A DNA stretch of 64,000 bases from Obrimoposthia wandeli. Its lineage: Eukaryota. Shown one piece after another: positions 11,384 to 59,937 of this stretch. The position numbers and the translations under genes are program-made. Where the stretch lies: assembly GCA_977020255.1 (NCBI GenBank), contig CDROCS010000412.1, positions 1 through 64,000 of the forward strand. Direction: 5' to 3'. Within the stretch, counting starts at the first letter, position 1, and each line of letters opens with the position of its first letter. The notes below the pieces were generated by a model that was not told where the DNA came from, ran no database searches, and was given only the letters and a program-made list of their open reading frames with translations.

Positions 11384-11386
11384 ATT

Positions 11387-19453: not shown

Positions 19454-19481
19454 TTTACAATTTTACAAATTATATTAATTT

Positions 19482-23918: not shown

Positions 23919-24875
23919 TGTTGGGTTGTTAATTAAAATAATTAATTTTTGTCAATTTAATTTGACATTTAAAAGTAATCTAAAATGCCCACAATTAGGG
24001 AGGTTTTCAAATTCAGCCTCCGACGGGGTGGTCCCGTTTCGCCTTGCCAGGCTCATCAGGAAGGCGGCTAGTTTTTTTTGATAGAGATAAGAAAGTGGTT
24101 TTGACCACCAAAGATTTTTTCCGCCCAGAAAAGACAGCGGATGTGATTGCGGTTTGATGCAATCTGGCTGATCATCATCATCATCATCATCATCATCCTC
24201 ATCCATCATCCTATCGGTCAGCATCCACACAGTCACTTCTATCCTGCCTTCCTCGGATGCAGTTGATGGTGCATCGCAGAAATTGTGTGTGCAACGGAGA
24301 TCGATGCAGTTCAATCCACCTGATTGCAATGGCTTTGCCAATGCCACATGCTTGCCGATTGCCGCGGGATCTTCCTCTCAGCCTACATTGACAACAGTAA
24401 CAGCAGTGAAAGAGACATACACACAGATTATCCGTTTCACCTGTTGCTGCACATCCTGTGTACTGCTGTCATTTCACATCTCTGGCCTTTACACAAGTCC
24501 ACAATCTGTCGGCTACTGCATATTGATTGATTTTTGGCAGAGGATGGAGGCTGTGTGTTGACTTTACACTTTTGATATATAAAATGCAATTGGGATTTTG
24601 TCAAGACAGAAACTGATTTTATCAAATACACAAAAATTATTATAAAAATATTTTCAGCAAACAATTGATTGAAATCAACAATTTGATATTACAGAAACGA
24701 AGTTATTTCATCAACAATTTGATATTACAGAAACGAAGTTATTTCATCAACAATTTGATATTACAGAAACGAAGTTATTTCATCAACAATTTGATATTGC
24801 AGATTCAATTAATAAATTAGATTTTGATCATTATTTGATTTTTGGAGGGATTAACCACATATACCATTTATAACA
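23919..24875 (+). repeat. 3' LTR (957 bp)
   Basis: Near-identical to 10430..11383, ends TATAACA followed by GATT. Confidence 0.95.
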
Positions 24876-35715: not shown

Positions 35716-36896
35716 AGAATAGCATAGAATCAGACCAATATCAAGCCTACCTCTTTCATTAAAGCATTCATAGATGATGTTTTTTAAATAACATACATAA
35801 TTTAACATTACTTATACATCAATGTTGATTAAAATATTCAACGTTGTAGTTGTTTAACTTTAAACATTTTGTTGTAAAAACTAAGATATTAAGACTTTTG
35901 AGTTAGATAATCAGGTTAGGGTGTAAAGGAAAACATTGGAAATTTTATAAGAATAAATCTAATAATCAATAAATCGAGACATATCTATATCTTCTAACAT
36001 CTCTATCATGAATCTTCTTTCAAAAACTTTCATACCTAACTTTCAGAGAAATTACCAAATACCATAAATTCATATATTTCCATACATATTGATTATTGAA
36101 AAACTGAACTTATCAATATTATCAACATCTAATCTCACTATCATCAACCATCATAAAGTGGTTGATAATAGGAATAATGATTTTTCTAATGTGTCATTGA
36201 GATTTAGACTATAAAATGGAATAATATAGTTAAATATAGAGTAGACTTAGATGTTTTTATTATCATACAAGCGCGTATACAAAGAATCTTATACCAAAAT
36301 TATCGATAATACACATATTTCATCTATATCATAACACATGTTGTAAATCCTAATAAAACCTTTACAATAATTCATCATAACTATTTTATTGATTAATCTA
36401 TTCTATCAGGTAGCTACTGATTATTGAATCTAGGGGCTATGTTTAATATTTCTAAAGATAGCATAGTTTCTCACCATTTTATTAAGATATTACTATTCAT
36501 TACTAACGTTTCATAAATCATCTAATTCAATAAATATCAATATTCACATCAATATATCCTTAACTTTCGAACTTATTATAAAATATTAATAAATATAAAG
36601 GAGAAAATACGTACCTTTGTTAGTTAATTCCATAGAGTCCAAACAAAAGTCACTAAGCCACAGGGTGCAATCTTGTATATTCCATCGTAATTCTGTTGGG
36701 TAGACATTGATCCATTGATATTCCGGAAAATGACATCATAATATTGGATTTTTCTTCTTGAGTTTCCATGATAATATGATGACCTTGCTATAAATCAGCT
36801 TACATGTTTATTTAAATATATCTTTGTTTATATAAAACTGAGACTCAGATTAACCAATAAGAATAGATGATACAATGTTACTAAAAATAGATTATT

Positions 36897-37076
36897 TTAT
36901 AGGGTTAAGAAGAGGAAAATCTCATGGTGGTTAAGATGTTTATGGAGAGTTCTCTTGATGTAATAAAGCTTGTCATCGCCGACAAAATTGGGGTCAACAG
37001 AGCAAGCGCTATCATTGATAGTATATTCTGCACTCTGAATAATCTCATTATAAATTTCAAATAACTCCTTTTCCAT
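36897..37076 (-). CDS. 59-aa ORF (MEKELFEIYNEIIQSAEY...) present in every array unit
   Basis: ATG 37076 to TAA 36897, downstream of rep on the same strand and preceded by paired TATA-like repeats; no family recognised. Confidence 0.35.
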   Translation of the reverse strand: MEKELFEIYNEIIQSAEYTINDSACSVDPNFVGDDKLYYIKRTLHKHLNHHEIFLFLTL

Positions 37077-37420
37077 TATAACTGAAAAAAGAACAAAAAA
37101 CGTTCACTTAAATACAAAATGTTCAAAAAGAACAACAAAACAAAAAAAAATCGCTGTGCTGTTACTATAAATAGATTTTCCTAACTCCTATATGCCTGTG
37201 CTGTGCTATTCTTGTGCTGTTACTATAAATAGATATATGTAACTCCTATATGCTTGTGCTGTGTAATTCTTGTGTAGTCTCTCTTTCCCCTCTTCTTTTT
37301 CCTTTTTCTTAAACATCCATAAGGACACCTACACAGCACAAGCATACAGTAGTTCGGTTCTACACAGTCTACACACCTACACAGCCTCTTCTTGATTTTT
37401 ACCGTGTTCCTTCGGGTGTT

Positions 37421-38317
37421 CTAACCGGGCGGGCTGCACGGGTGCTGCTCGTCAAACATTCGGTCATCCTGGTCGATAGCCTTGGTCCAGGTATGCGGTC
37501 CACTCTGATCGCTGGGTAACTTCCGAATGATCGAAGCATTCTGGCTGCCATTAGTTTTGATAGTTAACCTTGCTTTCTTCACACATGGAGTCAAGGGTGT
37601 ACCCCGCTTCGCCGGAAAAGGTTTCTTAGGAATAGTGATAATATTTGGATCCCTAAAAAGGGGCTGGTTGAACTCGTGGATCTTAATGCGTCTGTTGAGT
37701 GCATCTCTGGTTTCTTGTTCAAGATCCTTCGGCCAAAACAATTGCATAGAGTTGGTGATGAAAATACGAGGCATGAATTGAGGAAGTTGAGCAGATGTAT
37801 ATTTGACATTTACTGTCCTCGTAATGTGTCGATCTACTATATGTAGGAGATTGACCGCCGACCATGAAGCAAAGTTCATGTCGTCAATCACTAAACCGTC
37901 GTGCTCCGGTCCAATTTTAGCGAAATCTTGCCTATCCGAAATGAGAAGGGGATTAACGAAATGTGACAACGCAAAATGCGTTTTGCCTACACCAGTCTTG
38001 CCCACAAATATATGGGTTAGCATAGTAGAAGGATCGCTGAATTTGACTTTCTGGTGATCAGGAACACCTTGCACATCGATAAGAGGCCGAATAAAGTTTT
38101 CTGATTTGTAGATAATGTCCATCCTCTTTTGGAATAAGTAATTGAACGTGCGAGCACACTTATCGTGCTGCATGACAAAAGTTTCCGGCAACACTTGGCG
38201 TAGGTACTCCATTGACTCTTGGGTGCTGGTACATTCTTCCAAAATGTGCTTAAAAACTGATGATTTGTCTCCATCCCTACCTCGTTGTCCAATTTCTGCG
38301 AAATAACCATCTTGCAC
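37421..38317 (-). CDS. rep: Rep lacking the HUH nuclease: oligomerisation region plus SF3 helicase (array copy 1)
   Basis: Walker A GKTGVGKT, Walker B LVIDD, motif C IFITN, Arg finger ALNRRI. The ORF starts at a GTG after motif III is lost. Confidence 0.85.
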   Translation of the reverse strand: MQDGYFAEIGQRGRDGDKSSVFKHILEECTSTQESMEYLRQVLPETFVMQHDKCARTFNYLFQKRMDIIYKSENFIRPLIDVQGVPDHQKVKFSDPSTMLTHIFVGKTGVGKTHFALSHFVNPLLISDRQDFAKIGPEHDGLVIDDMNFASWSAVNLLHIVDRHITRTVNVKYTSAQLPQFMPRIFITNSMQLFWPKDLEQETRDALNRRIKIHEFNQPLFRDPNIITIPKKPFPAKRGTPLTPCVKKARLTIKTNGSQNASIIRKLPSDQSGPHTWTKAIDQDDRMFDEQHPCSPPG

Positions 38318-40456
38318 GTGTGTTTCTGTTTTATATATATCTTTGTTTATATAAAACTGAGACTCAGATTAACCAATAAGAATAGATGATACAATGTTAC
38401 TAAAAATAGATTATTTTATAGGGTTAAGAAGAGGAAAATCTCATGGTGGTTAAGATGTTTATGGAGAGTTCTCTTGATGTAATAAAGCTTGTCATCGCCG
38501 ACAAAATTGGGGTCAACAGAGCAAGCGCTATCATTGATAGTATATTCTGCACTCTGAATAATCTCATTATAAATTTCAAATAACTCCTTTTCCATTATAA
38601 CTGAAAAAAGAACAAAAAACGTTCACTTAAATACAAAATGTTCAAAAAGAACAACAAAACAAAAAAAAAATCGCTGTGCTGTTACTATAAATAGATTTTC
38701 CTAACTCCTATATGCCTGTGCTGTGCTATTCTTGTGCTGTTACTATAAATAGATATATGTAACTCCTATATGCTTGTGCTGTGTAATTCTTGTGTAGTCT
38801 CTCTTTCCCCTCTTCTTTTTCCTTTTTCTTAAACATCCATAAGGACACCTACACAGCACAAGCATACAGTAGTTCGGTTCTACACAGTCTACACACCTAC
38901 ACAGCCTCTTCTTGATTTTTACCGTGTTCCTTCGGGTGTTCTAACCGGGCGGGCTGCACGGGTGCTGCTCGTCAAACATTCGGTCATCCTGGTCGATAGC
39001 CTTGGTCCTGGTATGCGGTCCACTCTGATCGCTGGGTAACTTCCGAATGATCGAAGCATTCTGGCTGCCATTAGTTTTGATAGTTAACCTTGCTTTCTTC
39101 ACACATGGAGTCAAGGGTGTACCCGCTTCGCCGGAAAAGGTTTCTTAGGAATAGTGATAATATTTGGATCCCTAAAAAGGGGCTGGTTGAACTCGTGGAT
39201 CTTAATGCGTCTGTTGAGTGCATCTCTGGTTTCTTGTTCAAGATCCTTCGGCCAAAACAATTGCATAGAGTTGGTGATGAAAATACGAGGCATGAATTGA
39301 GGAAGTTGAGCAGATGTATATTTGACATTTACTGTCCTCGTAATGTGTCGATCTACTATATGTAGGAGATTGACCGCCGACCATGAAGCAAAGTTCATGT
39401 CGTCAATCACTAAACCGTCGTGCTCCGGTCCAATTTTAGCGAAATCTTGCCTATCCGAAATGAGAAGGGGATTAACGAAATGTGACAACGCAAAATGCGT
39501 TTTGCCTACACCAGTCTTGCCCACAAATATGTGGGTTAGCATAGTAGAAGGATCGCTGAATTTGACTTTCTGGTGATCAGGAACACCTTGCACATCGATA
39601 AGAGGCCGAATAAAGTTTTCTGATTTGTAGATAATGTCCATCCTCTTTTGGAATAAGTAATTGAACGTGCGAGCACACTTATCGTGCTGCATGACAAAAG
39701 TTTCCGGCAACACTTGGCGTAGGTACTCCATTGACTCTTGGGTGCTGGTACATTCTTCCAAAATGTGCTTAAAAACTGATGATTTGTCTCCATCCCTACC
39801 TCGTTGTCCAATTTCTGCGAAATAACCATCTTGCACGTGTGTTTCTGTTTTATATATATCTTTGTTTATATAAAACTGAGACTCAGATTAACCAATAAGA
39901 ATAGATGATACAATGTTACTAAAAATAGATTATTTTATAGGGTTAAGAAGAGGAAAATCTCATGGTGGTTAAGATGTTTATGGAGAGTTCTCTTGATGTA
40001 ATAAAGCTTGTCATCGCCGACAAAATTGGGGTCAACAGAGCAAGCGCTATCATTGATAGTATATTCTGCACTCTGAATAATCTCATTATAAATTTCAAAT
40101 AACTCCTTTTCCATTATAACTGAAAAAAGAACAAAAAACGTTCACTTAAATACAAAATGTTCAAAAAGAACAACAAAACAAAAAAATCGCTGTGCTGTTA
40201 CTATAAATAGATTTTCCTAACTCCTATATGCCTGTGCTGTGCTATTCTTGTGCTGTTACTATAAATAGATATATGTAACTCCTATATGCTTGTGCTGTGT
40301 AATTCTTGTGTAGTCTCTCTTTCCCCTCTTCTTTTTTCCTTTTTCTTAAACATCCATAAGGACACCTACACAGCACAAGCATACAGTAGTTCGGTTCTAC
40401 ACAGTCTACACACCTACACAGCCTCTTCTTGATTTTACCGTGTTCCTTCGGGTGTT

Positions 40457-41353
40457 CTAACCGGGCGGGCTGCACGGGTGCTGCTCGTCAAACATTCGGT
40501 CATCCTGGTCGATAGCCTTGGTCCTGGTATGCGGTCCACTCTGATCGCTGGGTAACTTCCGAATGATCGAAGCATTCTGGCTGCCATTAGTTTTGATAGT
40601 TAACCTTGCTTTCTTCACACATGGAGTCAAGGGTGTACCCCGCTTCGCCGGAAAAGGTTTCTTAGGAATAGTGATAATATTTGGATCCCTAAAAAGGGGC
40701 TGGTTGAACTCGTGGATCTTAATGCGTCTGTTGAGTGCATCTCTGGTTTCTTGTTCAAGATCCTTCGGCCAAAACAATTGCATAGAGTTGGTGATGAAAA
40801 TACGAGGCATGAATTGAGGAAGTTGAGCAGATGTATATTTGACATTTACTGTCCTCGTAATGTGTCGATCTACTATATGTAGGAGATTGACCGCCGACCA
40901 TGAAGCAAAGTTCATGTCGTCAATCACTAAACCGTCGTGCTCCGGTCCAATTTTAGCGAAATCTTGCCTATCCGAAATGAGAAGGGGATTAACGAAATGT
41001 GACAACGCAAAATGCGTTTTGCCTACACCAGTCTTGCCCACAAATATGTGGGTTAGCATAGTAGAAGGATCGCTGAATTTGACTTTCTGGTGATCAGGAA
41101 CACCTTGCACATCGATAAGAGGCCGAATAAAGTTTTCTGATTTGTAGATAATGTCCATCCTCTTTTGGAATAAGTAATTGAACGTGCGAGCACACTTATC
41201 GTGCTGCATGACAAAAGTTTCCGGCAACACTTGGCGTAGGTACTCCATTGACTCTTGGGTGCTGGTACATTCTTCCAAAATGTGCTTAAAAACTGATGAT
41301 TTGTCTCCATCCCTACCTCGTTGTCCAATTTCTGCGAAATAACCATCTTGCAC
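40457..41353 (-). CDS. rep: Rep helicase-only copy (array copy 3). Equivalent ORFs with frameshifts at 39111, 42144, 43492, 45180, 54086, 55833, 57291 and others
   Basis: Same motifs as copy 1. Confidence 0.85.
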   Translation of the reverse strand: MQDGYFAEIGQRGRDGDKSSVFKHILEECTSTQESMEYLRQVLPETFVMQHDKCARTFNYLFQKRMDIIYKSENFIRPLIDVQGVPDHQKVKFSDPSTMLTHIFVGKTGVGKTHFALSHFVNPLLISDRQDFAKIGPEHDGLVIDDMNFASWSAVNLLHIVDRHITRTVNVKYTSAQLPQFMPRIFITNSMQLFWPKDLEQETRDALNRRIKIHEFNQPLFRDPNIITIPKKPFPAKRGTPLTPCVKKARLTIKTNGSQNASIIRKLPSDQSGPHTRTKAIDQDDRMFDEQHPCSPPG

Positions 41354-44300: not shown

Positions 44301-47300
44301 CTACATTCTTCCTAACTGTGCTTAAAACTGATGATTTGTCTCCATCCCTACCTCGTTGTCCAATTTCTGCGAAATAACCATCTTGCACGTGTGTTTCTGT
44401 TTTATATATATCTTTGTTTATATAAAACTGAGACTCAGATTAACCAATAAGAATAGATGATACAATGTTACTAAAAAATAGATTATTTTATAGGGTTAAG
44501 AAGAGGAAAATCTCATGGTGGTTAAGATGTTTATGGAGAGTTCTCTTGATGTAATAAAGCTTGTCATCGCCGACAAAATTGGGGTCAACAGAGCAAGCGC
44601 TATCATTGATAGTATATTCTGCACTCTGAATAATCTCATTATAAATTTCAAATAACTCCTTTTCCATTATAACTGAAAAAAGAACAAAAAACGTTCACTT
44701 AAATACAAAATGTTCAAAAGAACAACAAAACAAAAAAAATCGCTGTGCTGTTACTATAAATAGATTTTCCTAACTCCTATATGCCTGTGCTGTGCTATTC
44801 TTGTGCTGTTACTATAAATAGATATATGTAACTCCTATATGCTTGTGCTGTGTAATTCTTGTGTAGTCTCTCTTTCCCCTCTTCTTTTTCCTTTTTCTTA
44901 AACATCCATAAGGACACCTACACAGCACAAGCATACAGTAGTTCGGTTCTACACAGTCTACACACCTACACAGCCTCTTCTTGATTTTTACCGTGTTCCT
45001 TCGGGTGTTCTAACCGGGCGGGCTGCACGGGTGCTGCTCGTCAAACATTCGGTCATCCTGGTCGATAGCCTTGGTCCTGGTATGCGGTCCACTCTGATCG
45101 CTGGGTAACTTCCGAATGATCGAAGCATTCTGGCTGCCATTAGTTTTGATAGTTAACCTTGCTTTCTTCACACATGGAGTCAAGGGTGTACCCCGCTTCG
45201 CCGGAAAAGGTTTCTTAGGAATAGTGATAATATTTGGATCCCTAAAAGGGGCTGGTTGAACTCGTGGATCTTAATGCGTCTGTTGAGTGCATCTCTGGTT
45301 TCTTGTTCAAGATCCTTCGGCCAAAACAATTGCATAGAGTTGGTGATGAAAATACGAGGCATGAATTGAGGAAGTTGAGCAGATGTATATTTGACATTTA
45401 CTGTCCTCGTAATGTGTCGATCTACTATATGTAGGAGATTGACCGCCGACCATGAAGCAAAGTTCATGTCGTCAATCACTAAACCGTCGTGCTCCGGTCC
45501 AATTTTAGCGAAATCTTGCCTATCCGAAATGAGAAGGGGATTAACGAAATGTGACAACGCAAAATGCGTTTTGCCTACACCAGTCTTGCCCACAAATATA
45601 TGGGTTAGCATAGTAGAAGGATCGCTGAATTTGACTTTCTGGTGATCAGGAACACCTTGCACATCGATAAGAGGCCGAATAAAGTTTTCTGATTTGTAGA
45701 TAATGTCCATCCTCTTTTGGAATAAGTAATTGAACGTGCGAGCACACTTATCGTGCTGCATGACAAAAGTTTCCGGCAACACTTGGCGTAGGTACTCCAT
45801 TGACTCTTGGGTGCTGGTACATTCTTCCAAAATGTGCTTAAAAACTGATGATTTGTCTCCATCCCTACCTCGTTGTCCAATTTCTGCGAAATAACCATCT
45901 TGCACGTGTGTTTCTGTTTTATATATATCTTTGTTTATATAAAACTGAGACTCAGATTAACCAATAAGAATAGATGATACAATGTTACTAAAAATAGATT
46001 ATTTTATAGGGTTAAGAAGAGGAAAATCTCATGGTGGTTAAGATGTTTATGGAGAGTTCTCTTGATGTAATAAAGCTTGTCATCGCCGACAAAATTGGGG
46101 TCAACAGAGCAAGCGCTATCATTGATAGTATATTCTGCACTCTGAATAATCTCATTATAAATTTCAAATAACTCCTTTTCCATTATAACTGAAAAAAGAA
46201 CAAAAAACGTTCACTTAAATACAAAATGTTCAAAAAGAACAACAAAACAAAAAAAAATCGCTGTGCTGTTACTATAAATAGATTTTCCTAACTCCTATAT
46301 GCCTGTGCTGTGCTATTCTTGTGCTGTTACTATAAATAGATATATGTAACTCCTATATGCTTGTGCTGTGTAATTCTTGTGTAGTCTCTCTTTCCCCTCT
46401 TCTTTTCCTTTTTCTTTAACCGCCATAAAGACCCCTACACAGCACAAGCATACAGTAGTTCAGTTCTACACAGTCTACACACCTACACAGCCTCTTCTTG
46501 ATTTTTACCGTGTTCCTTCGGGTGTTCTAACCGGGCGGGCTGCACGGGTGCTGCTCGTCAAACATTCGGTCATCCTGGTCGATAGCCTTGGTCCTGGTAT
46601 GCGGTCCACTCTGATCGCTGGGTAACTTCCGAATGATCGAAGCATTCTGGCTGCCATTAGTTTTGATAGTTAACCTTGCTTTCTTCACACATGGAGTCAA
46701 GGGTGTACCCCTTCGCCGGAAAAGGTTTCTTAGGAATAGTGATAATATTTGGATCCCTAAAAGGGGCTGGTTGAACTCGTGGATCTTAATGCGTCTGTTG
46801 AGTGCATCTCTGGTTTCTTGTTCAAGATCCTTCGGCCAAAACAATTGCATAGAGTTGGTGATGAAAATACGAGGCATGAATTGAGGAAGTTGAGCAGATG
46901 TATATTTGACATTTACTGTCCTCGTAATGTGTCGATCTACTATATGTAGGAGATTGACCGCCGACCATGAAGCAAAGTTCATGTCGTCAATCACTAAACC
47001 GTCGTGCTCCGGTCCAATTTTAGCGAAATCTTGCCTATCCGAAAAATGAGAAGGGATTAACGAAATGTGACAACGCAAAATGCGTTTTGCCTACACCAGT
47101 CTTGCCCACAAATATGTGGGTTAGCATAATAGAAGGATCGCTGAATTTGACTTTCTGGTGATCAGGAACACCTTGCACATCGATAAGAGGCCGAATAAAG
47201 TTTTCTGATTTGTAGATAATGTCCATCCTCTTTTGGAATAAGTAATTGAACGTGCGAGCACACTTATCGTGCTGCATGACAAAAGTTTCCGGCAACACTT

Positions 47301-50300
47301 GGCGTGGTACTCCATTGACTCTTGGGTGCTGGTACATTCTTCCAAAATGTGCTTAAAAACTGATGATTTGTCTCCATCCCTACCTCGTTGTCCAATTTCT
47401 GCAGAAATAACCATCTTGCACGTGTGTTTCTGTTTTATATATATCTTTGTTTATATAAAACTGAGACTCAGATTAACCAATAAGAATAGATGATACAATG
47501 TTACTAAAATAGATTATTTTATAGGGTTAAGAAGAGGAAAATCTCATGGTGGTTAAGATGTTTATGGAGAGTTCTCTTGATGTAATAAAGCTTGTCATCG
47601 CCGACAAAATTGGGGTCAACAGAGCAAGCGCTATCATTGATAGTATATTCTGCACTCTGAATAATCTCATTATAAATTTCCAATCACTCCTTTTCCATTA
47701 TAACTGAAAAAGAACAAAAACGTTCACTTAAATACAAAATGTTCAAAAGAACAACAAAACAAAAAAATCGCTGTGCTGTTACTATAAATAGATTTTCCTA
47801 ACTCTTATATGCCTGTGCTGTGCTATTCTTGTGCTGTTACTAAAAATAGATATATGTAACTCCTATATGCTTGTGCTGTGTAATTCTTGTGTAGTCTCTC
47901 TTTCCTCCCTTTTTTTTCTTTTTCTTAAACATCCATAAGGACACCTACACAACACTAGCATACAGTAGTTCGGTTCTACACAGTCTACACACCTACACAG
48001 CCTCTTCTTGATTTTTACCGTGTTCCTTCGGGTGTTCTAACCGGGCGGGCTGCACGGGTGCTGCTCGTCAAACATTCGGTCATCCTGGTCGATAGCCTTG
48101 GTCCTGGTATGCGGTCCACTCTGATCGCTGGGTAACTTCCGAATGATCGAAGCATTCTGGCTGCCATTAGTTTTGATAGTTAACCTTGCTTTCTTCACAC
48201 ATGGAGTCAAGGGTGTACCCGCTTCGCCGGAAAAGGTTTCTTAGGAATAGTGATAATATTTGGATCCTAAAAAGGGGCTGGTTGAACTCGTGGATCTTAA
48301 TGCGTCTGTTGAGTGCATCTCTGGTTTCTTGTTCAAGATCCTTCGGCCAAAACAATTGCATAGAGTTGGTGATGAAAATACGAGGCATGAATTGAGGAAG
48401 TTGAGCAGATGTATATTTGACATTTACTGTCCTCGTAATGTGTCGATCTACTATATGTAGGAGATTGACCGCCGACCATGAAGCAAAGTTCATGTCGTCA
48501 ATCACTAAACCGTCGTGCTCCGGTCAATTTTAGCGAAATCTTGCCTATCCGAAATGAGAAGGGGATTAACGAAATGTGACAACGCAAAATGCGTTTTGCC
48601 TACACCAGTCTTGCCCACAAATATAGGGTTAGCATAGTAGAAGGATCGCTGAATTTGACTTTCTGGTGATCAGGAACACCTTGCACATCGATAAGAGGCC
48701 GAATAAAGTTTTCTGATTTGTAGATAATGTCCATCCTCTTTGGAATAAGTAATTGAACGTGCGAGCACACTTATCGTGCTGCATGACAAAAGTTTCCGGC
48801 AACACTTGGCGTAGGTACTCCATTGACTCTTGGGTGCTGGTACATTCTTCCAAAATGTGCTTAAAAACTGATGATTTGTCTCCATCCCTACCTCGTTGTC
48901 CAATTTCTGCGAAATAACCATCTTGCACGTGTGTTTCTGTTTTATATATATCTTTGTTTATATAAAACTGAGACTCAGATTAACCAATAAGAATAGATGA
49001 TACAATGTTACTAAAAATAGATTATTTTATAGGGTTAAGAAGAGGAAAATCTCATGGTGGTTAAGATGTTTATGGAGAGTTCTCTTGATGTAATAAAGCT
49101 TGTCATCGCCGACAAAATTGGGGTCAACAGAGCAAGCGCTATCATTGATAGTATATTCTGCACTCTGAATAATCTCATTATAAATTTCAAATAACTCCTT
49201 TTCCATTATAACTGAAAAAAGAACAAAAAACGTTCACTTAAATACAAAATGTTCAAAAGAACAACAAAACAAAAAAATCGCTGTGCTGTTACTATAAATA
49301 GATTTTCCTAACTCCTATATGCCTGTGCTGTGCTATTCTTGTGCTGTTACTATAAATAGATATATGTAACTCCTATATGCTTGTGCTGTGTAATTCTTGT
49401 GTAGTCTCTCTTTCCCCCCCTTCTTTTTCCTTTTACTTAAACATCCATAAGGACACCTACACAGCACAAGCATACAGTAGTTCAGGTTCTACACAGTCTA
49501 CACACCTACACAGCCTCTTCTTGATTTTTACCGTGTTCTCTTCGGGTGTTCTAACTGGGCGGGCTGCACGGGTGCTGCTCGTCAAACATTCGGTCATCCT
49601 GGTCGATAGCCTTGGTCCTGGTATGCGGTCCACTCTGATCGCTGGGTAACTTCCGAATGATCGAAGCATTCTGGCTGCCATTAGTTTTGATAGTTAACCT
49701 TGCTTTCTTCACACATGGAGTCAAGGGTGTACCTTCGCCTTCGCCGGAAAAGGTTTCTTAGAATAGTGATAATATTTGGATCCCTAAAAAGGGGCTGGTT
49801 GAACTCGTGGATCTTAATGCGTCTGTTGAGTGCATCTCTGGTTTCTTGTTCAAGATCCTTCGGCCAAAACAATTGCATAGAGTTGGTGATGAAAATACGA
49901 GGCATGAATTGAGGAAGTTGAGCAGATGTATATTTGACATTTACTGTCCTCGTAATGTGTCGATCTACTATATGTAGGAGATTGACCGCCGACCATGAAG
50001 CAAAGTTCATGTCGTCAATCACTAAACCGTCGTGCTCCGGTCCAATTTTAGCGAAATCTTGCCTATCCGAAATGAGAAGGGGATTAACGAAATGTGACAA
50101 CGCAAAATGCGTTTTGCCTACACCAGTCTTGCCCACAAATATATGGGTTAGCATAGTAGAAGGATCGCTGAATTTGACTTTTTGGGTGATCAGGAACCCT
50201 TTCCACCTCGAAAAGAGGCCGAATAAAGTTTTCTGATTTGTAGATAATGTCCATCCTCTTTTGGAATAAGTAATTGAACGTGCGAGCACACTTATCGTTC

Positions 50301-53300
50301 TGCATGACAACAGTTTCCGGCAACTCTTGGCATAGGTACTCCATTGACTCTTGGGTGCTGGTACATTCTTCCAAAATGTGCTTAAAAACTGATGATTTGT
50401 CTCCATCCCTACCTCGTTGTCCAATTTCTGCGAAATAACCATCTTGCACGTGTGTTTCTGTTTTATATATATCTTTGTTTACATAAAACTGAGACTCAGA
50501 TTAACCAATAAGAATAGATGATACAATGTTACTAAAAATAGATTATTTTATAGGGTTAAGAAGAGGAAAATCTCATGGTGGTTAAGATGTTTATGGAGAG
50601 TTCTCTTGATGTAATAAAGCTTGTCATCGCCGACAAAATTGGGGTCAACAGAGCAAGCGCTATCATTGATAGTATATTCTGCACTCTGAATAATCTCATT
50701 ATAAATTTCAAATAACTCCTTTTCCATTATAACTGAAAAAAGAACAAAAACGTTCACTTAAATACAAAATGTTCAAAAAGAACAACAAAACAAAAAAATC
50801 GCTGTGCTGTTACTATAAATAGATTTTCCTAACTCTATATGCCTGTGCTGTGCTATTCTTGTGCTGTTACTATAAATAGATATAATGTAACCTCTATATG
50901 CTTGTGCTGTGTAATTCTTGTGTAGTCTCTCTTTCCCCTCTTCTTTTTCCTTTTTTCTTAAACATCCATAAGGACACCTACACAGCACAAGCATACAGTA
51001 GTTCAGTTCTACACAGTCTACACACCTACACAGCCTCTTCTTGATTTTACCGTGTTCCTTCGGGTGTTCTAACCGGGCGGGCTGCACGGGTGCTGCTCGT
51101 CAAACATTCGGTCATCCTGGTCGATAGCCTTGGTCCTGGTATGCGGTCCACTCTGATCGCTGGGTAACTTCCGAATGATCGAAGCATTCTGGCTGCCATT
51201 AGTTTTGATAGTTAACCTTGCTTTCTTCACACATGGAGTCAAGGGTGTACCCGCTTCGCCGGAAAAGGTTTCTTAGGAATAGTGATAATATTTGGATCCC
51301 TAAAAAGGGGCTGGTTGAACTCGTGGATCTTAATGCGTCTGTTGAGTGCATCTCTGGTTTCTTGTTCAAGATCCTTCGGCCAAAACAATTGCATAGAGTT
51401 GGTGATGAAAATACGAGGCATGAATTGAGGAAGTTGAGCAGATGTATATTTGACATTTACTGTCCTCGTAATGTGTCGATCTACTATATGTAGGAGATTG
51501 ACCGCCGACCATGAAGCAAAGTTCATGTCGTCAATCACTAAACCGTGTGCTGGTCAATTTTAGCGAAATCTTGCCTATCCGAAATGAGAAGGGGATTAAC
51601 GAAATGTGACAACGCAAATGCCGTTTTGCCAACACAAGCCTTGCCCACAAATATATGGGTTAGCATGGTAGAAGGATCGCGGAATTTGACTTCCTGGGGA
51701 TAAGGAACACCTTGCACATCGATAAGGGGCCGAATAAAGTTTTCTGATTTGTAGATAATGTCCATCCTCTTTGGAATAAGTAATTGAACGTGCGAGCACA
51801 CTTATCGTGCTGCATGACAAAAGTTTCCGGCAACACTTGGCGTAGGTACTCCATTGACTCTTGGGTGCTGGTACATTCTTCCAAAATGTGCTTAAAACTG
51901 ATGATTTGTCTCCATCCCTACCTCGTTGTCCAATTTCTGCGAAATAACCATCTTGCACGTGTGTTTCTGTTTTATATATATCTTTGTTTATATAAAACTG
52001 AGACTCAGATTAACCAATAAGAATAGATGATACAATGTTACTAAAAATAGATTATTTTATAGGGTTAAGAAGAGGAAAATCTCATGGTGGTTAAGATGTT
52101 TATGGAGAGTTCTCTTGATGTAATAAAGCTTGTCATCGCCGACAAAATTGGGGTCAACAGAGCAAGCGCTATCATTGATAGTATATTCTGCACTCTGAAT
52201 AATCTCATTATAAATTTCAACAACTCCTTTTCCATTATAACTGAAAAAAGAACAAAAACGTTCACTTAAATACAAAATGTTCAAAAGAACAACAAAACAA
52301 AAAAAATCGCTGTGCTGTTACTATAAATAGATTTTCCTAACTCCTATATGCCTGTGCTGTGCTATTCTTGTGCTGTTACTATAAATAGATACATATCACT
52401 CCTTTATGCTTGTTCTGTATAATGTTTGTGTAGTCTCTCTTTCCCTCTTCTTTTTCCTTTTCTTAAACATCCATAAGGACACCTACACAGCACAAGCATA
52501 CAGTAGTTCGGTTCTACACAGTCTACACACCTACACAGCCTCTTCTTGATTTTACCGTGTTCCTTCGGGTGTTCTAACCGGGCGGGCTGCACGGGTGCTG
52601 CTCGTCAAACATTCGGTCATCCTGGTCGATAGCCTTGGTCTGGTATGCGGTCCACTCTGATCGCTGGGTAACTTCCGAATGATCGAAGCATTCTGGCTGC
52701 CATTAGTTTTGATAGTTAACCTTGCTTTCTTCACACATGGAGTCAAGGGTGTACCCCGCTTCGCCGGAAAAGGTTTCTTAGGAATAGTGATAATATTTGG
52801 ATCCCTAAAAGGGGCTGGTTGAACTCGTGGATCTTAATGCGTCTGTTGAGTGCATCTCTGGTTTCTTGTTCAAGATCCTTCGGCCAAAACAATTGCATAG
52901 AGTTGGTGATGAAAATACGAGGCATGAATTGAGGAAGTTGAGCAGATGTATATTTGACATTTACTGTCCTCGTAATGTGTCGATCTACTATATGTAGGAG
53001 ATTGACCGCCGACCATGAAGCAAAGTTCATGTCGTCAATCACTAAACCGTCGTGTCTCCAGTCCAATTTTAGCGAAATCTTGCCTATCCGAAATGAGAAG
53101 GGGATTAACGAAATGTGACAACGCAAAATGCGTTTTGCCTTACACCAGTCTTGCCCACAAATATATGGGTTAGCATAGTAGAAGGATCGCTGAATTTGAC
53201 TTTCTGGTGATCAGGAACACCTTGCACATCGATAAGAGGCCGAATAAAGTTTTCTGATTTGTAGATAATGTCCATCCTCTTTTGGAATAAGTAATTGAAC

Positions 53301-53936
53301 GTGCGAGCACACTTATCGTGCTGCATGACAAAAGTTTCCGGCAACACTTGGCGTAGGTACTCCATTGACTCTTGGGTGCTGGTACATTCTTCCAAAATGT
53401 GCTTAAAACTGATGATTTGTCTCCATCCCTACCTCGTTGTCCAATTTCTGCGAAATAACCATCTTGCACGTGTGTTTCTGTTTTATATATATCTTTGTTT
53501 ATATAAAACTGAGACTCAGATTAACCAATAAGAATAGATGATACAATGTTACTAAAAAAGAGATTATTTTATAGGGTTAAGAAGAGGAAAATCTCATGGT
53601 GGTTAAGATGTTTATGGAGAGTTCTCTTGATGTAATAAAGCTTGTCATCGCCGACAAAATTGGGGTCAACAGAGCAAGCGCTATCATTGATAGTATATTC
53701 TGCACTCTGAATAATCTCATTATAAATTTCAAATAACTCCTTTTCCATTATAACTGAAAAAGAACAAAAACGTTCACTTAAATACAAAATGTTCAAAAGA
53801 ACAACAAAACAAAAATCGCTGTGCTGTTACTATAAATAGATTTTCCTAACTCCTATATGCCTGTGCTGTGCTATTCTTGTGCTGTTACTATAAATAGATA
53901 TATGTAACTCCTATATGCTTGTGCTGTGTAATTCTT

Positions 53937-53971
53937 GTGTAGATCTCGGTGGTCGCCGTATCATTAAAAAA
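53937..53971 (+). other. Illumina P5 adapter read-through sequence (assembly/polishing artefact)
   Basis: GTGTAGATCTCGGTGGTCGCCGTATCATT followed by AAAAAA replaces the tagtctctctttcccc.. seen at this position in the other units. Confidence 0.95.
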
Positions 53972-56900
53972 TCTTAAACATCCATAAGGACACCTACACA
54001 GCACAAGCATACAGTAGTTCGGTTCTACACAGTCTACACACCTACACAGCCTCTTCTTGATTTTTACCGTGTTCCTTCGGGTGTTCTAACCGGGCGGGCT
54101 GCACGGGTGCTGCTCGTCAAACATTCGGTCATCCTGGTCGATAGCCTTGGTCCTGGTATGCGGTCCACTCTGATCGCTGGGTAACTTCCGAATGATCGAA
54201 GCATTCTGGCTGCCATTAGTTTTGATAGTTAACCTTGCTTTCTTCACACATGGAGTCAAGGGTGTACCCCGCTTCGCCGGAAAAGGTTTCTTAGGAATAG
54301 TGATAATATTTGGATCCCTAAAAAGGGGCTGGTTGAACTCGTGGATCTTAATGCGTCTGTTGAGTGCATCTCTGGTTTCTTGTTCAAGATCCTTCGGCCA
54401 AAACAATTGCATAGAGTTGGTGATGAAAATACGAGGCATGAATTGAGGAAGTTGAGCAGATGTATATTTGACATTTACTGTCCTCGTAATGTGTCGATCT
54501 ACTATATGTAGGAGATTGACCGCCGACCATGAAGCAAAGTTCATGTCGTCAATCACTAAACCGTCGTGCTCCGGTCCAATTTTAGCGAAATCTTGCCTAT
54601 CCGAAATGAGAAGGGGATTAACGAAATGTGACAACGCAAAATGCGTTTTGCCTACACCAGTCTTGCCCATAAATATATGGGTTAGCATAGTAGAAGGATC
54701 GCTGAATTTGACTTTCTGGTGATCAGGAACACCTTGCACATCGATAAGAGGTCGAATAAAGTTTGCTGATTTGTAGATAATGTCCATCCTCTTTTTGGAA
54801 TAAGTAATTGAACGTGCGAGCACACTTATCGTGCTGCATGACAAAAGTTTCCGGCAACACTTGGCGTAGGTACTCCATTGACTCTTGGGTGCTGGTACAT
54901 TCTTCCAAAATGTGCTTAAAAACTGATGATTTGTCTCCATCCCTACCTCGTTGTCCAATTTCTGCGAAATAACCATCTTGCACGTGTGTTTCTGTTTATA
55001 TATATCTTTGTTTATATAAAACTGAGACTCAGATTAACCAATAAGAATAGATGATACAATGTTACTAAAATAGATTATTTTATAGGGTTAAGAAGAGGAA
55101 AATCTCATGGTGGTTAAGATGTTTATGGAGAGTTCTCTTGATGTAATAAAGCTTGTCATCGCCGACAAAATTGGGGTCAATAGAGCAAGCGCTATCATTG
55201 ATAGTATATTCTGCACTCTGAATAATCTCATTATAAATTTCAAATAACTCCTTTTCCATTATAACTGAAAAAAGAACAAAAAACGTTCACTTAAATACAA
55301 AATGTTCAAAAAGAACAACAAAACAAAAAAAAATCGCTGTGCTGTTACTATAAATAGATTTTCCTAACTCCTATATGCCTGTGCTGTGCTATTCTTGTGC
55401 TGTTACTATAAATAGATATATGTAACTCCTATATGCTTGTGCTGTGTAATTTTGTGTAGTCTCTCTTTCCCCTCTTCTTTTCCTTTGTCTTAAACATCCA
55501 TAAGGACACCTACACAGCACAAGCATACAGTAGTTCGGTTCTACACAGTCTACACACCTACACAGCCTCTTCTTGATTTTTACCGTGTTCCTTCGGGTGT
55601 TCTAACCGGGCGGGCTGCACGGGTGCTGCTCGTCAAACATTCGGTCATCCTGGTCGATAGCCTTGGTCCTGGTATGCGGTCCACTCTGATCGCTGGGTAA
55701 CTTCCGAATGATCGAAGCATTCTGGCTGCCATTAGTTTTGATAGTTAACCTTGCTTTCTTCACACATGGAGTCAAGGGTGTACCCGCTTCGCCGGAAAAG
55801 GTTTCTTAGGAATAGTGATAATATTTGGATCCCTAAAAAAGGGGCTGGTTGAACTCGTGGATCTTAATGCGTCTGTTGAGTGCATCTCTGGTTTCTTGTT
55901 CAAGATCCTTCGGCCAAAACAATTGCATAGAGTTGGTGATGAAAATACGAGGCATGAATTGAGGAAGTTGAGCAGATGTATATTTGACATTTACTGTCCT
56001 CGTAATGTGTCGATCTACTATATGTAGGAGATTGACCGCCGACCATGAAGCAAAGTTCATGTCGTCAATCACTAAACCGTCGTGCTCCGGTCCAATTTTA
56101 GCGAAATCTTGCCTATCCGAAATGAGAAGGGGATTAACGAAATGTGACAACGCAAAATGCGTTTTGCCTACACCAGTCTTGCCCACAAATATATGGGTTA
56201 GCATAGTAGAAGGATCGCTGAATTTGACTTTCTGGTGATCAGGAACACCTTGCACATCGATAAGAGGCCGAATAAAGTTTTCTGATTTGTAGATAATGTC
56301 CATCCTCTTTTTGGAATAAGTAATTGAACGTGCGAGCACACTTATCGTGCTGCATGACAAAAGTTTCCGGCAACACTTGGCGTAGGTACTCCATTGACTC
56401 TTGGGTGCTGGTACATTCTTCCAAAATGTGCTTAAAAACTGATGATTTGTCTCCATCCCTACCTCGTTGTCCAATTTCTGCGAAATAACCATCTTGCACG
56501 TGTGTTTCTGTTTTATATATATCTTTGTTTATATAAAACTGAGACTCAGATTAACCAATAAGAATAGATGATACAATGTTACTAAAAATAGATTATTTTA
56601 TAGGGTTAAGAAGAGGAAAATCTCATGGTGGTTAAGATGTTTATGGAGAGTTCTCTTGATGTAATAAAGCTTGTCATCGCCGACAAAATTGGGGTCAACA
56701 GAGCAAGCGCTATCATTGATAGTATATTCTGCACTCTGAATAATCTCATTATAAATTTCAAATAACTCCTTTTCCATTATAACTGAAAAAAGAACAAAAA
56801 ACGTTCACTTAAATACAAAATGTTCAAAAAGAACAACAAAACAAAAAAAAATCGCTGTGCTGTTACTATAAATAGATTTTCCTAACTCCTATATGCCTGT

Positions 56901-58638
56901 GCTGTGCTATTCTTGTGCTGTTACTATAAATAGATATATGTAACTCCTATATGCTTGTGCTGTGTAATTCTTGTGTAGTCTCTCTTTCCCTCTTCTTTTT
57001 CCTTTTTTCTAAACATCCATAAGGACACCTACACAGCACAAGCATACAGTAGTTCGGTTCTACACAGTCTACACACCTACACAGCCTCTTCTTGATTTTT
57101 ACCGTGTTCCTTCGGGTGTTCTAACCGGGCGGGCTGCACGGGTGCTGCTCGTCAAACATTCGGTCATCCTGGTCGATAGCCTTGGTCCTGGTATGCGGTC
57201 CACTCTGATCGCTGGGTAACTTCCGAATGATCGAAGCATTCTGGCTGCCATTAGTTTTGATAGTTAACCTTGCTTTCTTCACACATGGAGTCAAGGGTGT
57301 ACCCGCTTCGCCGGAAAAGGTTTCTTAGGAATAGTGATAATATTTGGATCCCTAAAAAGGGGCTGGTTGAACTCGTGGATCTTAATGCGTCTGTTGAGTG
57401 CATCTCTGGTTTCTTGTTCAAGATCCTTCGGCCAAAACAATTGCATAGAGTTGGTGATGAAAATACGAGGCATGAATTGAGGAAGTTGAGCAGATGTATA
57501 TTTGACATTTACTGTCCTCGTAATGTGTCGATCTACTATATGTAGGAGATTGACCGCCGACCATGAAGCAAAGTTCATGTCGTCAATCACTAAACCGTCG
57601 TGCTCCGGTCCAATTTTAGCGAAATCTTGCCTATCCGAAATGAGAAGGGGATTAACGAAATGTGACAACGCAAAATGCGTTTTGCCTACACCAGTCTTGC
57701 CCACAAATATATGGGTTAGCATAGTAGAAGGATCGCTGAATTTGACTTTCTGGTGATCAGGAACACCTTGCACATCGATAAGAGGCCGAATAAAGTTTTC
57801 TGATTTGTAGATAATGTCCATCCTCTTTTGGAATAAGTAATTGAACGTGCGAGCACACTTATCGTGCTGCATGACAAAAGTTTCCGGCAACACTTGGCGT
57901 AGGTACTCCATTGACTCTTGGGTGCTGGTACATTCTTCCAAAATGTGCTTAAAAACTGATGATTTGTCTCCATCCCTACCTCGTTGTCCAATTTCTGCGA
58001 AATAACCATCTTGCACGTGTGTTTCTGTTTTATATATATCTTTGTTTATATAAAACTGAGACTCAGATTAACCAATAAGAATAGATGATACAATGTTACT
58101 AAAAATAGATTATTTTATAGGGTTAAGAAGAGGAAAATCTCATGGTGGTTAAGATGTTTATGGAGAGTTCTCTTGATGTAATAAAGCTTGTCATCGCCGA
58201 CAAAATTGGGGTCAACAGAGCAAGCGCTATCATTGATAGTATATTCTGCACTCTGAATAATCTCATTATAAATTTCAAATAACTCCTTTTCCATTATAAC
58301 TGAAAAAAGAACAAAAAACGTTCACTTAAATACAAAATGTTCAAAAAGAACAACAAAACAAAAAACTATCGCTGTGCTGTTACTATAAATAGATTTTCCT
58401 AACTCCTATATGCCTGTGCTGTGCTATTCTTGTGCTGTTACTATAAATAGATATATGTAACTCCTATATGCTTGTGCTGTGTAATTCTTGTGTAGTCTCT
58501 CTTTCCCCTCTTCTTTTTCCTTTTTCTTAAACATCCATAAGGACACCTACACAGCACAAGCATACAGTAGTTCGGTTCTACACAGTCTACACACCTACAC
58601 AGCCTCTTCTTGATTTTTACCGTGTTCCTTCGGGTGTT

Positions 58639-59937
58639 CTAACCGGGCGGGCTGCACGGGTGCTGCTCGTCAAACATTCGGTCATCCTGGTCGATAGCCT
58701 TGGTCCTGGTATGCGGTCCACTCTGATCGCTGGGTAACTTCCGAATGATCGAAGCATTCTGGCTGCCATTAGTTTTGATAGTTAACCTTGCTTTCTTCAC
58801 ACATGGAGTCAAGGGTGTACCCCGCTTCGCCGGAAAAGGTTTCTTAGGAATAGTGATAATATTTGGATCCTTAAAAAGGGGCTGGTTGAACTCGTGGATC
58901 TTAATGCGTCTGTTGAGTGCATCTCTGGTTTCTTGTTCAAGATCCTTCGGCCAAAACAATTGCATAGAGTTGGTGATGAAAATACGAGGCATGAATTGAG
59001 GAAGTTGAGCAGATGTATATTTGACATTTACTGTCCTCGTAATGTGTCGATCTACTATATGTAGGAGATTGACCGCCGACCATGAAGCAAAGTTCATGTC
59101 GTCAATCACTAAACCGTCGTGCTCCGGTCCAATTTTAGCGAAATCTTGCCTATCCGAAATGAGAAGGGGATTAACGAAATGTGACAACGCAAAATGCGTT
59201 TTGCCTACACCAGTCTTGCCCACAAATATATGGGTTAGCATAGTAGAAGGATCGCTGAATTTGACTTTCTGGTGATCAGGAACACCTTGCACATCGATAA
59301 GAGGCCGAATAAAGTTTTCTGATTTGTAGATAATGTCCATCCTCTTTTGGAATAAGTAATTGAACGTGCGAGCACACTTATCGTGCTGCATGACAAAAGT
59401 TTCCGGCAACACTTGGCGTAGGTACTCCATTGACTCTTGGGTGCTGGTACATTCTTCCAAAATGTGCTTAAAAACTGATGATTTGTCTCCATCCCTACCT
59501 CGTTGTCCAATTTCTGCGAAATAACCATCTTGCACGTGTGTTTCTGTTTTGTTTGTTTTTTTGACATATTCTATCATATGATCGACATCTGCAGCATCGA
59601 CTGGTATAACATAGCGAATAACGAGCGCCTTACAGGCAGCCGAACATGTTTTTGCCGATTTGAATGTAGCGAATCCCTGAATCGAAATTAGCGATTAATA
59701 AAATCAATATTAAAAGCAAATTCAGATACCTGAAGGTGGTGAAATCCGAGAACTGACATTTCCTCTTGGATCACGAAGTATTTAGAGTGCTTGACTGCAT
59801 TGGCAGCGAAAGCCTCGGGACTGGAATCAGCGGTTAAACGATTGAATTGGTTGATAGAATTTGATTGTGATTGAAAATGTCTTGTGGCGGATTATTAGAA
59901 TTGCTTTGACAGAATCACAGTAAAACGTCATAATCAT
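58639..59937 (-). CDS. rep: Full-length circovirus-like Rep (HUH endonuclease plus SF3 helicase), spliced
   Basis: KYFVIQEEMSVLGFHHLQ|GFATFK (motif II across intron 59677..59729), IEYVKK (motif III), then helicase. Candidate motif I (KTFSITIKF) and ATG 59937 need a 1-nt correction at ~59836..59838 or another intron. Confidence 0.8.
59677..59729 (-). other. 53-nt phase-0 GT-AG intron in Rep motif II
   Basis: CAC CAC CTT CAG|GTATCT...CGCTAATTTCGATTCAG|GGA TTC. Branch-point-like CTAAT; in-frame stop inside the intron. Confidence 0.85.

What the first reader, a model, noticed from the sequence alone, without database searches (positions are those of the whole stretch)
36816..59550. 22.7-kb array amplifies the Rep helicase but leaves the nicking domain single-copy
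Seen: each unit restarts a few codons after motif III (YVKK), so 14 copies lack motifs I-III and only the 5'-most copy is complete. Both array ends run into unique sequence, so the unit is an internal segment of a larger element. Inference: a rolling-circle concatemer or unequal crossing-over product. Nuclease-less, oligomerisation-competent Rep could act as a dominant-negative antiviral, or the array could be a small-RNA source. Copy number may be distorted by assembly.
Basis: partly seen in the sequence, partly recalled or inferred. Interest (0 to 1): 0.75.

Follow-up and report, generated by a model that had tools for sequence, protein, structure and literature searches.

The report
Tandem array of viral Rep fragment
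A fossil replication gene of a small circular DNA virus sits in an AT-rich, probably animal genome, and its helicase-coding part plus 0.6 kb of downstream DNA was copied head to tail 15 times; as assembled the copies look like decaying repeat DNA, not a working gene family.

Summary
The array is real: 15 head-to-tail units of 1507-1521 bp at 36811-59550. The gene lies on the minus strand. Each unit holds the last 302 codons of a CRESS-DNA-virus Rep (central domain and SF3 helicase) plus about 605 bp of non-Rep DNA. The nuclease part (motifs II and III, and a divergent motif I region) occurs once, in the unique right flank (59551-59891).

Both array ends fall at the same phase of the unit, and all 14 inner junctions are identical. 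This fits one founding duplication of an internal segment followed by unequal exchange. It does not fit a concatemer of a replicon: the unit has no nuclease domain and no origin hairpin.

The "complete" 5'-most copy has no in-frame start codon, and its nuclease domain lies in two frames. As assembled, only 3 of 15 helicase copies keep their frame, and pN/pS is 0.85. The differences between units are patchy and are concentrated in the middle of the array, so many may be long-read noise.

The Rep lineage is poorly sampled; its closest protein is 30% identical.

Neither the dominant-negative nor the small-RNA role can be tested here. Tandem Rep-bearing viral fossils are already known from yam, tobacco and Giardia.

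The parts
36811..59550 (-). Tandem array: 15 head-to-tail units of 1507-1521 bp. Both ends fall at the same phase of the unit; the start is ambiguous by about 5 nt because of microhomology.
58639..59891 (-). Rep-derived gene, 5'-most copy (one part, first base to last). It comprises the HUH nuclease region, the central domain, the SF3 helicase and a C-terminal tail. It has no in-frame start codon and one change of frame inside the nuclease domain.
59551..59891 (-). Single-copy nuclease (HUH) part in the unique right flank. Motif II (HxQ) and motif III (YVKK) are present; the motif I region is alignable but divergent.
58034..59550 (-). Representative unit (rightmost, unbroken). Rep codons lie at 58639-59550 and the non-Rep tail at 58034-58638.
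58639..59550 (-). Amplified Rep segment in the rightmost unit. It holds the central (oligomerisation-type) domain, the SF3 helicase with Walker A, Walker B, motif C and conserved arginines, and a low-confidence C-terminal tail.
   Evidence: family-invariant columns all kept. (Gemini_AL1_M at 17 bits, below the cut-off of 24)..
58034..58638 (.). Non-Rep tail of the unit, GC 0.33, against 0.44 for the Rep part and 0.27-0.28 for the outer flanks. Whether it is viral or host DNA is unresolved. It contains a 59-codon ATG ORF on the minus strand.
37155..37274 (.). A segment of about 58 bp present twice in tandem (89% identity) inside every unit; the copy in unit 1 is shown. Each copy has a TATA-like palindromic core.
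38319..38366 (.). Hairpin created by the unit-unit junction (first inner junction shown): 19-nt arms, 10-nt loop. It is absent from both parental contexts.
35900..36810 (.). Unique AT-rich left flank, which continues the unit's tail without a break.
59892..60400 (.). Unique AT-rich right flank beyond the gene. GC drops at about 59900.
10429..24803 (+). Neighbour: a young LTR retrotransposon with near-identical LTRs 13.49 kb apart. It carries glycoprotein ORFs of the Monjiviricetes type upstream of the protease-RT-RNaseH-integrase ORF.
31365..32939 (-). Neighbour: a 524-codon ORF with a weak family-B DNA polymerase signal. It may be a remnant of a Maverick/Polinton-type polymerase; this is not established.

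Best explanation
This is an endogenous fossil of a CRESS-DNA virus replication gene in a repeat-rich, AT-rich, probably animal chromosome.

Shown. A nearly full-length Rep reading region lies on the minus strand. A 1.52-kb internal segment starts three codons after nuclease motif III and runs through the central domain, the SF3 helicase, the stop codon and about 605 bp further. This segment is present 15 times head to tail. The nuclease part and both outer flanks are single-copy.

Inferred. One illegitimate joining at a few bases of T-rich microhomology made the first duplicate. Unequal crossing-over or replication slippage between the then-homologous units expanded it to 15 copies. The high identity between units shows that the expansion or homogenisation is recent.

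Inferred. The array has no protein function and behaves as a young satellite-like repeat. It may still be transcribed and feed small-RNA pathways, as viral fossils in repeat-rich regions often do, but that is not shown here.
For: Array geometry. There are 15 units. The left end falls at reference position 675 and the right end at 677 of the same unit, which makes a whole number of copies. All 14 inner junctions have the same sequence, and each flank matches the unit up to that junction, with only about 3-4 shared bases. The flanks are unique in the window.

Rep identity.
- The word search finds P0001 at 30% identity, E 2.5e-28.
- The relatives of P0001 sit on contigs of 1.3-2.7 kb, and some carry PF02407, PF00799 or PF08283.
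- All 38 family-invariant columns are kept in the window protein, including Walker A, Walker B, motif C and motif III.
- The motif II columns are kept in the upstream piece.
- hhalign gives E 2.6e-47.
- Foldseek matches SF3 helicases, with the PCV2 Rep ATPase 8xms_C at TMt 0.63, and CRESS Reps down to E 1.8e-21.

Not a replicon. tblastn with 14 relatives finds nothing outside the array and its right flank. No origin-type hairpin is present. No Rfam or tRNA hit was found.

No sign of selection on the copies. 3 of 15 frames are intact. There are 14 synonymous, 43 non-synonymous and 1 stop variant, giving pN/pS 0.85.

Host context. The window also holds an LTR retrotransposon, a polymerase remnant and satellites.
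Against: The same geometry would arise if a circle excised from the locus were amplified and put back by homologous recombination, so the mechanism of expansion is not proven.

Much of the variation between units looks like assembly noise. Of 90 private substitutions, 71 have another private difference within 10 columns. Transversions outnumber transitions (70 to 47). 36 of 44 indel events are 1 nt long. Differences rise toward the middle of the array (rho 0.57, p 0.025). The true number of intact copies may therefore be higher, and the pN/pS value is unreliable, which weakens the 'no protein function' step.

The three unbroken copies keep every helicase motif. The host is not identified. Whether the 605-bp tail is viral is unknown. 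No expression data were available.
Confidence: 0.7

Rival explanations
1. Rolling-circle or circle-derived concatemer. A 1.52-kb circle, either a defective viral DNA or a circle excised from the locus, was copied by rolling-circle synthesis, and the multimer entered the chromosome.
For: The head-to-tail units are highly identical and share a single junction type. The junction forms a hairpin that neither parental context has (z -2.6). Arrays of partial Rep-bearing genomes are known in yam (PMC5014472).
Against: The unit lacks the nuclease domain and any origin-type hairpin, so it is not a replicon that this Rep could nick and rejoin. The junction lies in an arm of the hairpin, not in its loop, and the hairpin is weak (-7.5 kcal/mol) and AT-rich. 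A multimer entering at random would not end at the same phase on both sides, and its flanks would not continue the gene. Only re-entry by homologous recombination into a resident single copy would give this geometry, and that cannot be told apart from unequal exchange.
Confidence: 0.1
2. Dosage-amplified antiviral protein. The units encode Rep proteins without a nuclease but able to oligomerise, which would poison the replication complexes of related viruses.
For: The unit keeps the central domain (weak Gemini_AL1_M match) and a helicase with every family-invariant motif. Three copies are unbroken and differ by two residues. Each unit carries TATA-like repeats upstream of the next unit's Rep segment.
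Against: As assembled, 12 of 15 copies are frame-broken and pN/pS is 0.85. The unit's frame has no ATG at its head. The first ATG after the TATA-like repeats opens a separate 59-codon ORF that stops before the junction. The word search found no close homologue in other genomes. There are no expression data.
Confidence: 0.05
3. Small-RNA source. The array is transcribed as part of a repeat-rich cluster and yields small RNAs against related viruses. This is compatible with the best explanation.
For: The array sits among a young LTR retrotransposon, a polymerase remnant and satellites. Small RNAs from Rep-bearing fossils are reported in yam and against viral fossils in Entamoeba (PMC5014472; PMC7493932).
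Against: Nothing in the sequence itself shows transcription. The host and its small-RNA pathways are unknown.
Confidence: 0.25
4. Assembly distortion. The locus is real, but the number of units and many of the differences between them are products of long-read assembly.
For: Private differences are patchy (71 of 90 clustered). 1-nt indels dominate, and 15 of 44 indel events lie in single-base runs. Transversions exceed transitions. Differences peak in the middle of the array, farthest from unique anchors.
Against: The units are not identical and both ends are anchored in unique sequence, so an array of several units must exist.
Confidence: 0.35

Closest known systems
EGV1 endogenous geminivirus-like arrays of yam (Dioscorea), and the geminivirus-related DNA (GRD) of Nicotiana (PMC5014472)
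   Same: Both are Rep-bearing ssDNA-virus fossils arranged as long head-to-tail arrays (EGV1 is estimated to exceed 23 kb) with partial rep genes. siRNAs map to EGV1.
   Different: In yam the 2.6-kb unit carries partial rep genes, ren and the intergenic origin hairpin, so it is a piece of genome that includes the origin, in a plant host. Here the unit has no origin and no nuclease part, the flanks continue the gene, and the Rep belongs to a different, poorly sampled CRESS lineage in an animal-like genome.
Tandemly repeated CRESS viral fossil of Giardia, and the CRESS fossils of Entamoeba (PMC7493932)
   Same: Both are CRESS-virus-derived insertions in a eukaryotic chromosome. One forms a tandem repeat of about 10 kb that only long reads resolved. 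Small RNAs against the fossils are reported in Entamoeba.
   Different: Those are described as whole-genome integrations in protists. Here only a Rep gene is recognisable, and the repeated unit is an internal segment of it.
CRESS-DNA virus Rep proteins (Pfam Viral_Rep PF02407, Gemini_AL1 PF00799, Gemini_AL1_M PF08283; PCV2 Rep structures 7lar and 8xms)
   Same: Same domain order of HUH nuclease, central domain and SF3 helicase. Motifs II and III, Walker A, Walker B and motif C are all present. There is profile-level homology (E 2.6e-47) and a fold match.
   Different: The window protein alone passes no Pfam cut-off (best 17 bits against 24). Its nearest protein is 30% identical. The motif I region is divergent, there is no start codon, and the nuclease domain is split over two frames.
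[quoted passage not shown]
   Same: It is the second-best structural match among viral proteins: E 1.6e-19, 28% identity over 278 columns.
   Different: That element is reported as extrachromosomal and not found integrated (PMC3198968). The original paper is not held. The likeness is only a lead to a flatworm host, not a test.
Ordinary segmental tandem duplication and satellite birth by unequal crossing-over
   Same: A whole number of units, one founding junction with a few bases of microhomology, colinear flanks and very high identity between units.
   Different: The amplified segment happens to be the helicase-coding part of a viral fossil.

Membership tests
CRESS-DNA virus Rep (HUH nuclease + SF3 helicase) | SF3 helicase motifs: Walker A, Walker B, motif C and conserved arginines | tested here: met
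   The family-invariant columns G159, G162, G164, K165, T166, D198, D199, N242, R262 and R263 are all kept. The fold matches SF3 helicases, including the PCV2 Rep ATPase.
CRESS-DNA virus Rep (HUH nuclease + SF3 helicase) | Nuclease motif III (YxxK) | tested here: met
   Y43 and K46 are invariant in A1. Motif III lies in the single-copy flank, three codons before the unit starts.
CRESS-DNA virus Rep (HUH nuclease + SF3 helicase) | Nuclease motif II (HUH or HxQ) | tested here: met
   H52 and Q54 of the upstream piece are invariant in A2. They lie in a different frame from the rest of the gene.
CRESS-DNA virus Rep (HUH nuclease + SF3 helicase) | Nuclease motif I | tested here: inconclusive
   The region aligns with motif I of the relatives, but the hydrophobic positions are replaced by polar residues.
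CRESS-DNA virus Rep (HUH nuclease + SF3 helicase) | Significant similarity to curated Rep families | tested here: met
   The window protein alone gives only Gemini_AL1_M at 17 bits, below the cut-off of 24. Its family against Reps bearing PF02407 or PF00799 gives hhalign probability 100%, E 2.6e-47. tblastn with P0011 gives E 2e-21.
Complete CRESS-DNA virus genome (integrated) | Origin stem-loop next to Rep | tested here: not met
   The inverted-repeat scan of a unit and both flanks finds only the hairpin made by the junction. The parental contexts do not fold better than shuffled sequence.
Complete CRESS-DNA virus genome (integrated) | Capsid gene | tested here: inconclusive
   No ORF longer than 59 codons lies in the unit's tail or the near flank. 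Capsids of this lineage are unknown, and the relatives' DNA was not fetched.
Endogenous viral element | Virus-derived sequence continuous with host chromosome sequence | tested here: met
   The same window holds an LTR retrotransposon, satellites and AT-rich unique flanks. The host species is not identified.
Concatemer of a rolling-circle replicon | Each unit is a full replicon (origin plus complete Rep), and the ends fall at arbitrary phases | tested here: not met
   The unit lacks the nuclease part and an origin. Both ends are at the same phase, and the flanks continue the unit.
Geminiviridae Rep | Gemini_AL1 catalytic domain and Gemini_AL1_M central domain above the Pfam cut-offs | tested here: not met
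   The window pieces give no Gemini_AL1 hit, and Gemini_AL1_M scores 17 bits, below 24. One relative (P0006) passes for the central domain.
Small-RNA-producing cluster | Small RNAs mapping to the locus | not testable with these tools

The most novel reading that the evidence does not exclude
The host has amplified a nuclease-less Rep (central domain plus helicase) as a multi-copy antiviral gene whose product joins and disables the replication hexamers of related circulating viruses. On this reading, the apparent frame breaks in the middle of the array are assembly noise.
Probability: 0.05. Interest if true: 0.75.

Novelty: new member of a known kind. Interest (0 to 1): 0.3.

Why it matters
The locus adds a poorly sampled CRESS Rep lineage to the fossil record of an AT-rich, probably invertebrate, genome. 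Its nearest protein is 30% identical and is known only from small metagenomic contigs, so the fossil gives a host lead for that lineage.

The locus is also a clean example of how a viral fossil can seed a young satellite. There is one founding junction and a whole number of units, and the pre-duplication sequence can still be read from the flanks.

If the array proved to be expressed, it would be a natural case for studying defence derived from viral fossils. On present evidence, however, it is an ordinary repeat expansion of a kind already described for Rep-bearing fossils in plants and Giardia.

Tried and rejected
- Pfam and PDB sequence searches with the window protein alone gave nothing significant. 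A PDB profile search gave only weak hits to nanovirus and PCV2 Rep, E 0.05-0.1.
- Rfam and tRNA scans of the window found nothing. The bacterial-type promoter and terminator scan was no better than shuffled sequence.
- Host identification failed. Exact look-ups of three window proteins found nothing. The third word search, with the retrotransposon pol, found relatives of only 50-55% identity; the named ones were frogs, a pseudoscorpion and a spider.
- The paper on the planarian element is not held, and literature searches for planarian CRESS fossils were unproductive.
- A Helitron was considered and rejected. From my own knowledge, Helitron helicases are SF1, whereas this one is SF3.
- A plasmid Rep was considered and rejected. 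Only one relative shows a weak Rep_OBD hit, and the context is chromosomal.
- The large representative-protein search was not run.
Full report
OBSERVATION. A blastn of one unit (39175-40691) against the window finds 15 head-to-tail copies from 36811 to 59550. They are 97.7-100% identical to that unit, and the repeat finder gives start-to-start spacings of 1504-1521 bp. The left end of the array corresponds to position 675 of the reference unit and the right end to position 677, so the array is a whole number of copies of one segment. GC is about 0.39-0.41 across the array and 0.25-0.30 outside it.

WHAT THE UNIT ENCODES. The rightmost unit, read on the minus strand, gives an unbroken frame of 302 codons from the junction to a stop. 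About 605 bp without a long ORF follow. On its own the protein passes no Pfam cut-off; the best match is the geminivirus Rep central domain at 17 bits against a cut-off of 24. It also has no significant sequence match in the PDB.

- The word search found a single relative, P0001, at 30% identity and E 2.5e-28.
- Searching with P0001 found P0002-P0014. All sit on contigs of 1.3-2.7 kb, and several carry Viral_Rep, Gemini_AL1 or Gemini_AL1_M.
- In the alignment with P0001-P0006, the window protein keeps all 38 invariant columns, including motif III (Y..K), Walker A, Walker B and motif C.
- Profile against profile, this family matches the Reps that carry PF02407 or PF00799 with probability 100% and E 2.6e-47, from motif I to the end of the helicase.
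- A model built on the alignment is confident only in the helicase core, where blocks reach pLDDT 84-90; the mean is 59.8.
- That core matches SF3 helicases: papillomavirus E1, AAV Rep40 and the PCV2 Rep ATPase domain 8xms_C with TMt 0.63.
- Among predicted viral structures the best matches are CRESS Reps, with E down to 1.8e-21.

The gene is therefore a Rep of the CRESS-DNA virus kind, from a thinly sampled lineage.

THE SINGLE-COPY NUCLEASE PART. The unit begins three codons after YVKK. Upstream, in the unique flank 59551-59891, one piece in another frame aligns with the N-termini of the relatives. It keeps the invariant columns around motif II (Q42, E44, S46, G49, H52, Q54). The motif I region is alignable, but its hydrophobic positions are replaced.

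As it stands, this copy has stop codons directly upstream of the motif I region and no in-frame start codon. The nuclease domain lies in two frames separated by a short stretch that starts GT and ends AG. The relatives' proteins run through that point without a gap, so they do not share an intron there, and no tool predicted one. I made no joined translation and searched the two pieces apart. tblastn with all 14 relatives finds Rep-like sequence nowhere else in the window. The break count for the 5'-most copy is one change of frame and a missing start codon, so 'complete' is only partly right.

HOW THE ARRAY AROSE. All 14 inner junctions have the same sequence. The left flank matches the unit from the junction onward, and the right flank matches it up to the junction. 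The two parental contexts share only about 3-4 T-rich bases at the joint. Both flanks are single-copy in the window.

This is the geometry expected from one illegitimate duplication of an internal segment followed by unequal exchange between the copies. It is not the geometry of a multimer of a replicon. The unit has no nuclease part. No origin-type hairpin exists in the unit or at either parental breakpoint. No capsid-sized ORF is nearby. The junction itself creates a modest AT-rich hairpin (19-nt arms, -7.5 kcal/mol, z -2.6) that neither parent has. I cannot explain this hairpin and treat it as a possible trace of a template switch. A circle excised from the locus, amplified and returned by homologous recombination would give the same picture, so that route cannot be excluded.

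STATE OF THE COPIES. As assembled, 3 of 15 units keep the full frame. The other 12 carry frameshifting indels; between 1 and 6 indel events per unit separate them from the rightmost copy, and none of these is a multiple of three. Compared with that natural copy there are 117 distinct substitution variants, 104 of them private to one unit. Transitions number 47 and transversions 70. In the coding part, 14 variants are synonymous, 43 non-synonymous and 1 creates a stop, giving pN/pS 0.85. There are 44 distinct indel events, of which 36 are 1 nt long and 15 lie in single-base runs.

The private differences are patchy: 71 of 90 private substitutions have another private difference within 10 columns. 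They are also commoner in the middle of the array (Spearman 0.57, p 0.025). That pattern suggests long-read consensus noise far from unique anchors rather than independent mutations. The count of broken copies is therefore an upper bound, and the selection estimate is weak. The two outermost unbroken copies differ by two residues.

FUNCTION. Nothing in the sequence supports it, however. The unit's frame has no ATG at its head. The TATA-like 58-bp repeats in each unit's tail are followed first by a separate 59-codon ORF that stops before the junction. Most copies are broken as assembled. A small-RNA role is plausible by analogy (PMC5014472; PMC7493932) and from the repeat-rich setting, but it cannot be tested here.

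SURROUNDINGS AND HOST. The window also holds a young LTR retrotransposon at about 10.4-24.8 kb, with near-identical LTRs. This element carries two ORFs of the Monjiviricetes fusion-glycoprotein family upstream of the protease-RT-RNaseH-integrase ORF. The window further holds a 524-codon ORF with a weak family-B polymerase signal and several satellites.

Exact look-ups of three window proteins found nothing. The best pol relatives are only 50-55% identical, and the named ones come from animals. The second-best viral fold match is the Rep of a planarian virus-like element. That element is reported as extrachromosomal and not known to be integrated (PMC3198968). An AT-rich invertebrate, perhaps a flatworm, is a lead and not a result.

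How far the virus-derived DNA extends downstream of Rep is unknown. The unit's tail has GC 0.33, between the Rep part (0.44) and the flanks (0.27-0.28).

COMPARISON AND NOVELTY. Long head-to-tail arrays of Rep-bearing ssDNA-virus fossils are known in yam and tobacco (PMC5014472), and a 10-kb tandem CRESS fossil is known in Giardia (PMC7493932). Three things are particular to this locus. The amplified unit is an internal gene segment without an origin. The pre-duplication state can be read from the flanks. The Rep lineage is poorly known. I rate it a new member of a known kind, of modest interest.

STEPS LEFT OUT AND SLIPS. I did not fetch the DNA of the contigs that encode the relatives, and I did not scan the viral or metagenome collections. 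The hosts of those relatives are unknown and may be animals, so I could not tell whether the bar on fetching applies. I did not run the large representative-protein search.

Noticed in passing
window 10429-24803 (+): A young LTR retrotransposon with LTRs about 100% identical and 13.49 kb apart. Two ORFs (14625-15815 and 15793-16710) match the Monjiviricetes fusion glycoprotein family (E 9e-30 and 1e-56). They lie upstream of the protease-RT-RNaseH-integrase ORF (16817-19453), which is an unusual place for an env-like gene. An RNase_T-like ORF lies at 22783-23586. The best pol relatives are only 50-55% identical.
   Followed up: partly
window 31365-32939 (-): A 524-codon ORF with polymerase-like motifs. 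It has only a weak DNA_pol_B hit (E 0.014) and no PDB match. It may be a remnant of a Maverick/Polinton-type protein-primed polymerase.
   Followed up: partly
window 38319-38366, and the same place at every inner junction: The unit-unit junction creates an inverted repeat (19-nt arms, 10-nt loop; DNA fold -7.5 kcal/mol, z -2.6) that neither parental breakpoint has. This could be chance in AT-rich DNA or a trace of a template switch.
   Followed up: partly
window 37155-37274, and the same place in every unit: A segment of about 58 bp is present twice in tandem (89% identity) in the non-Rep tail of each unit, each copy with a TATA-like palindromic core. On the minus strand it is followed by a 59-codon ATG ORF (36897-37076 in unit 1).
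   Followed up: no
window 61264-61538, 35366-35662, 34828-35003 and 4671-4840: Short satellites flank the array: 35 bp x 7.9, 113 bp x 2.6, 87 bp x 2 and 56 bp x 3.1.
   Followed up: no
window 44406-54999 (middle units of the array): Differences between units are patchy and concentrated in the middle of the array. Transversions exceed transitions and 1-nt indels dominate, which looks like unpolished long-read consensus rather than mutation.
   Followed up: yes
window 36600-36810 (-): Just left of the array lies a 38-codon ATG ORF (36653-36769), followed by a GT-type donor-like site. It is in DNA slightly richer in GC than the outer flank. It may be part of the ancestral insert or a host exon.
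   Followed up: no
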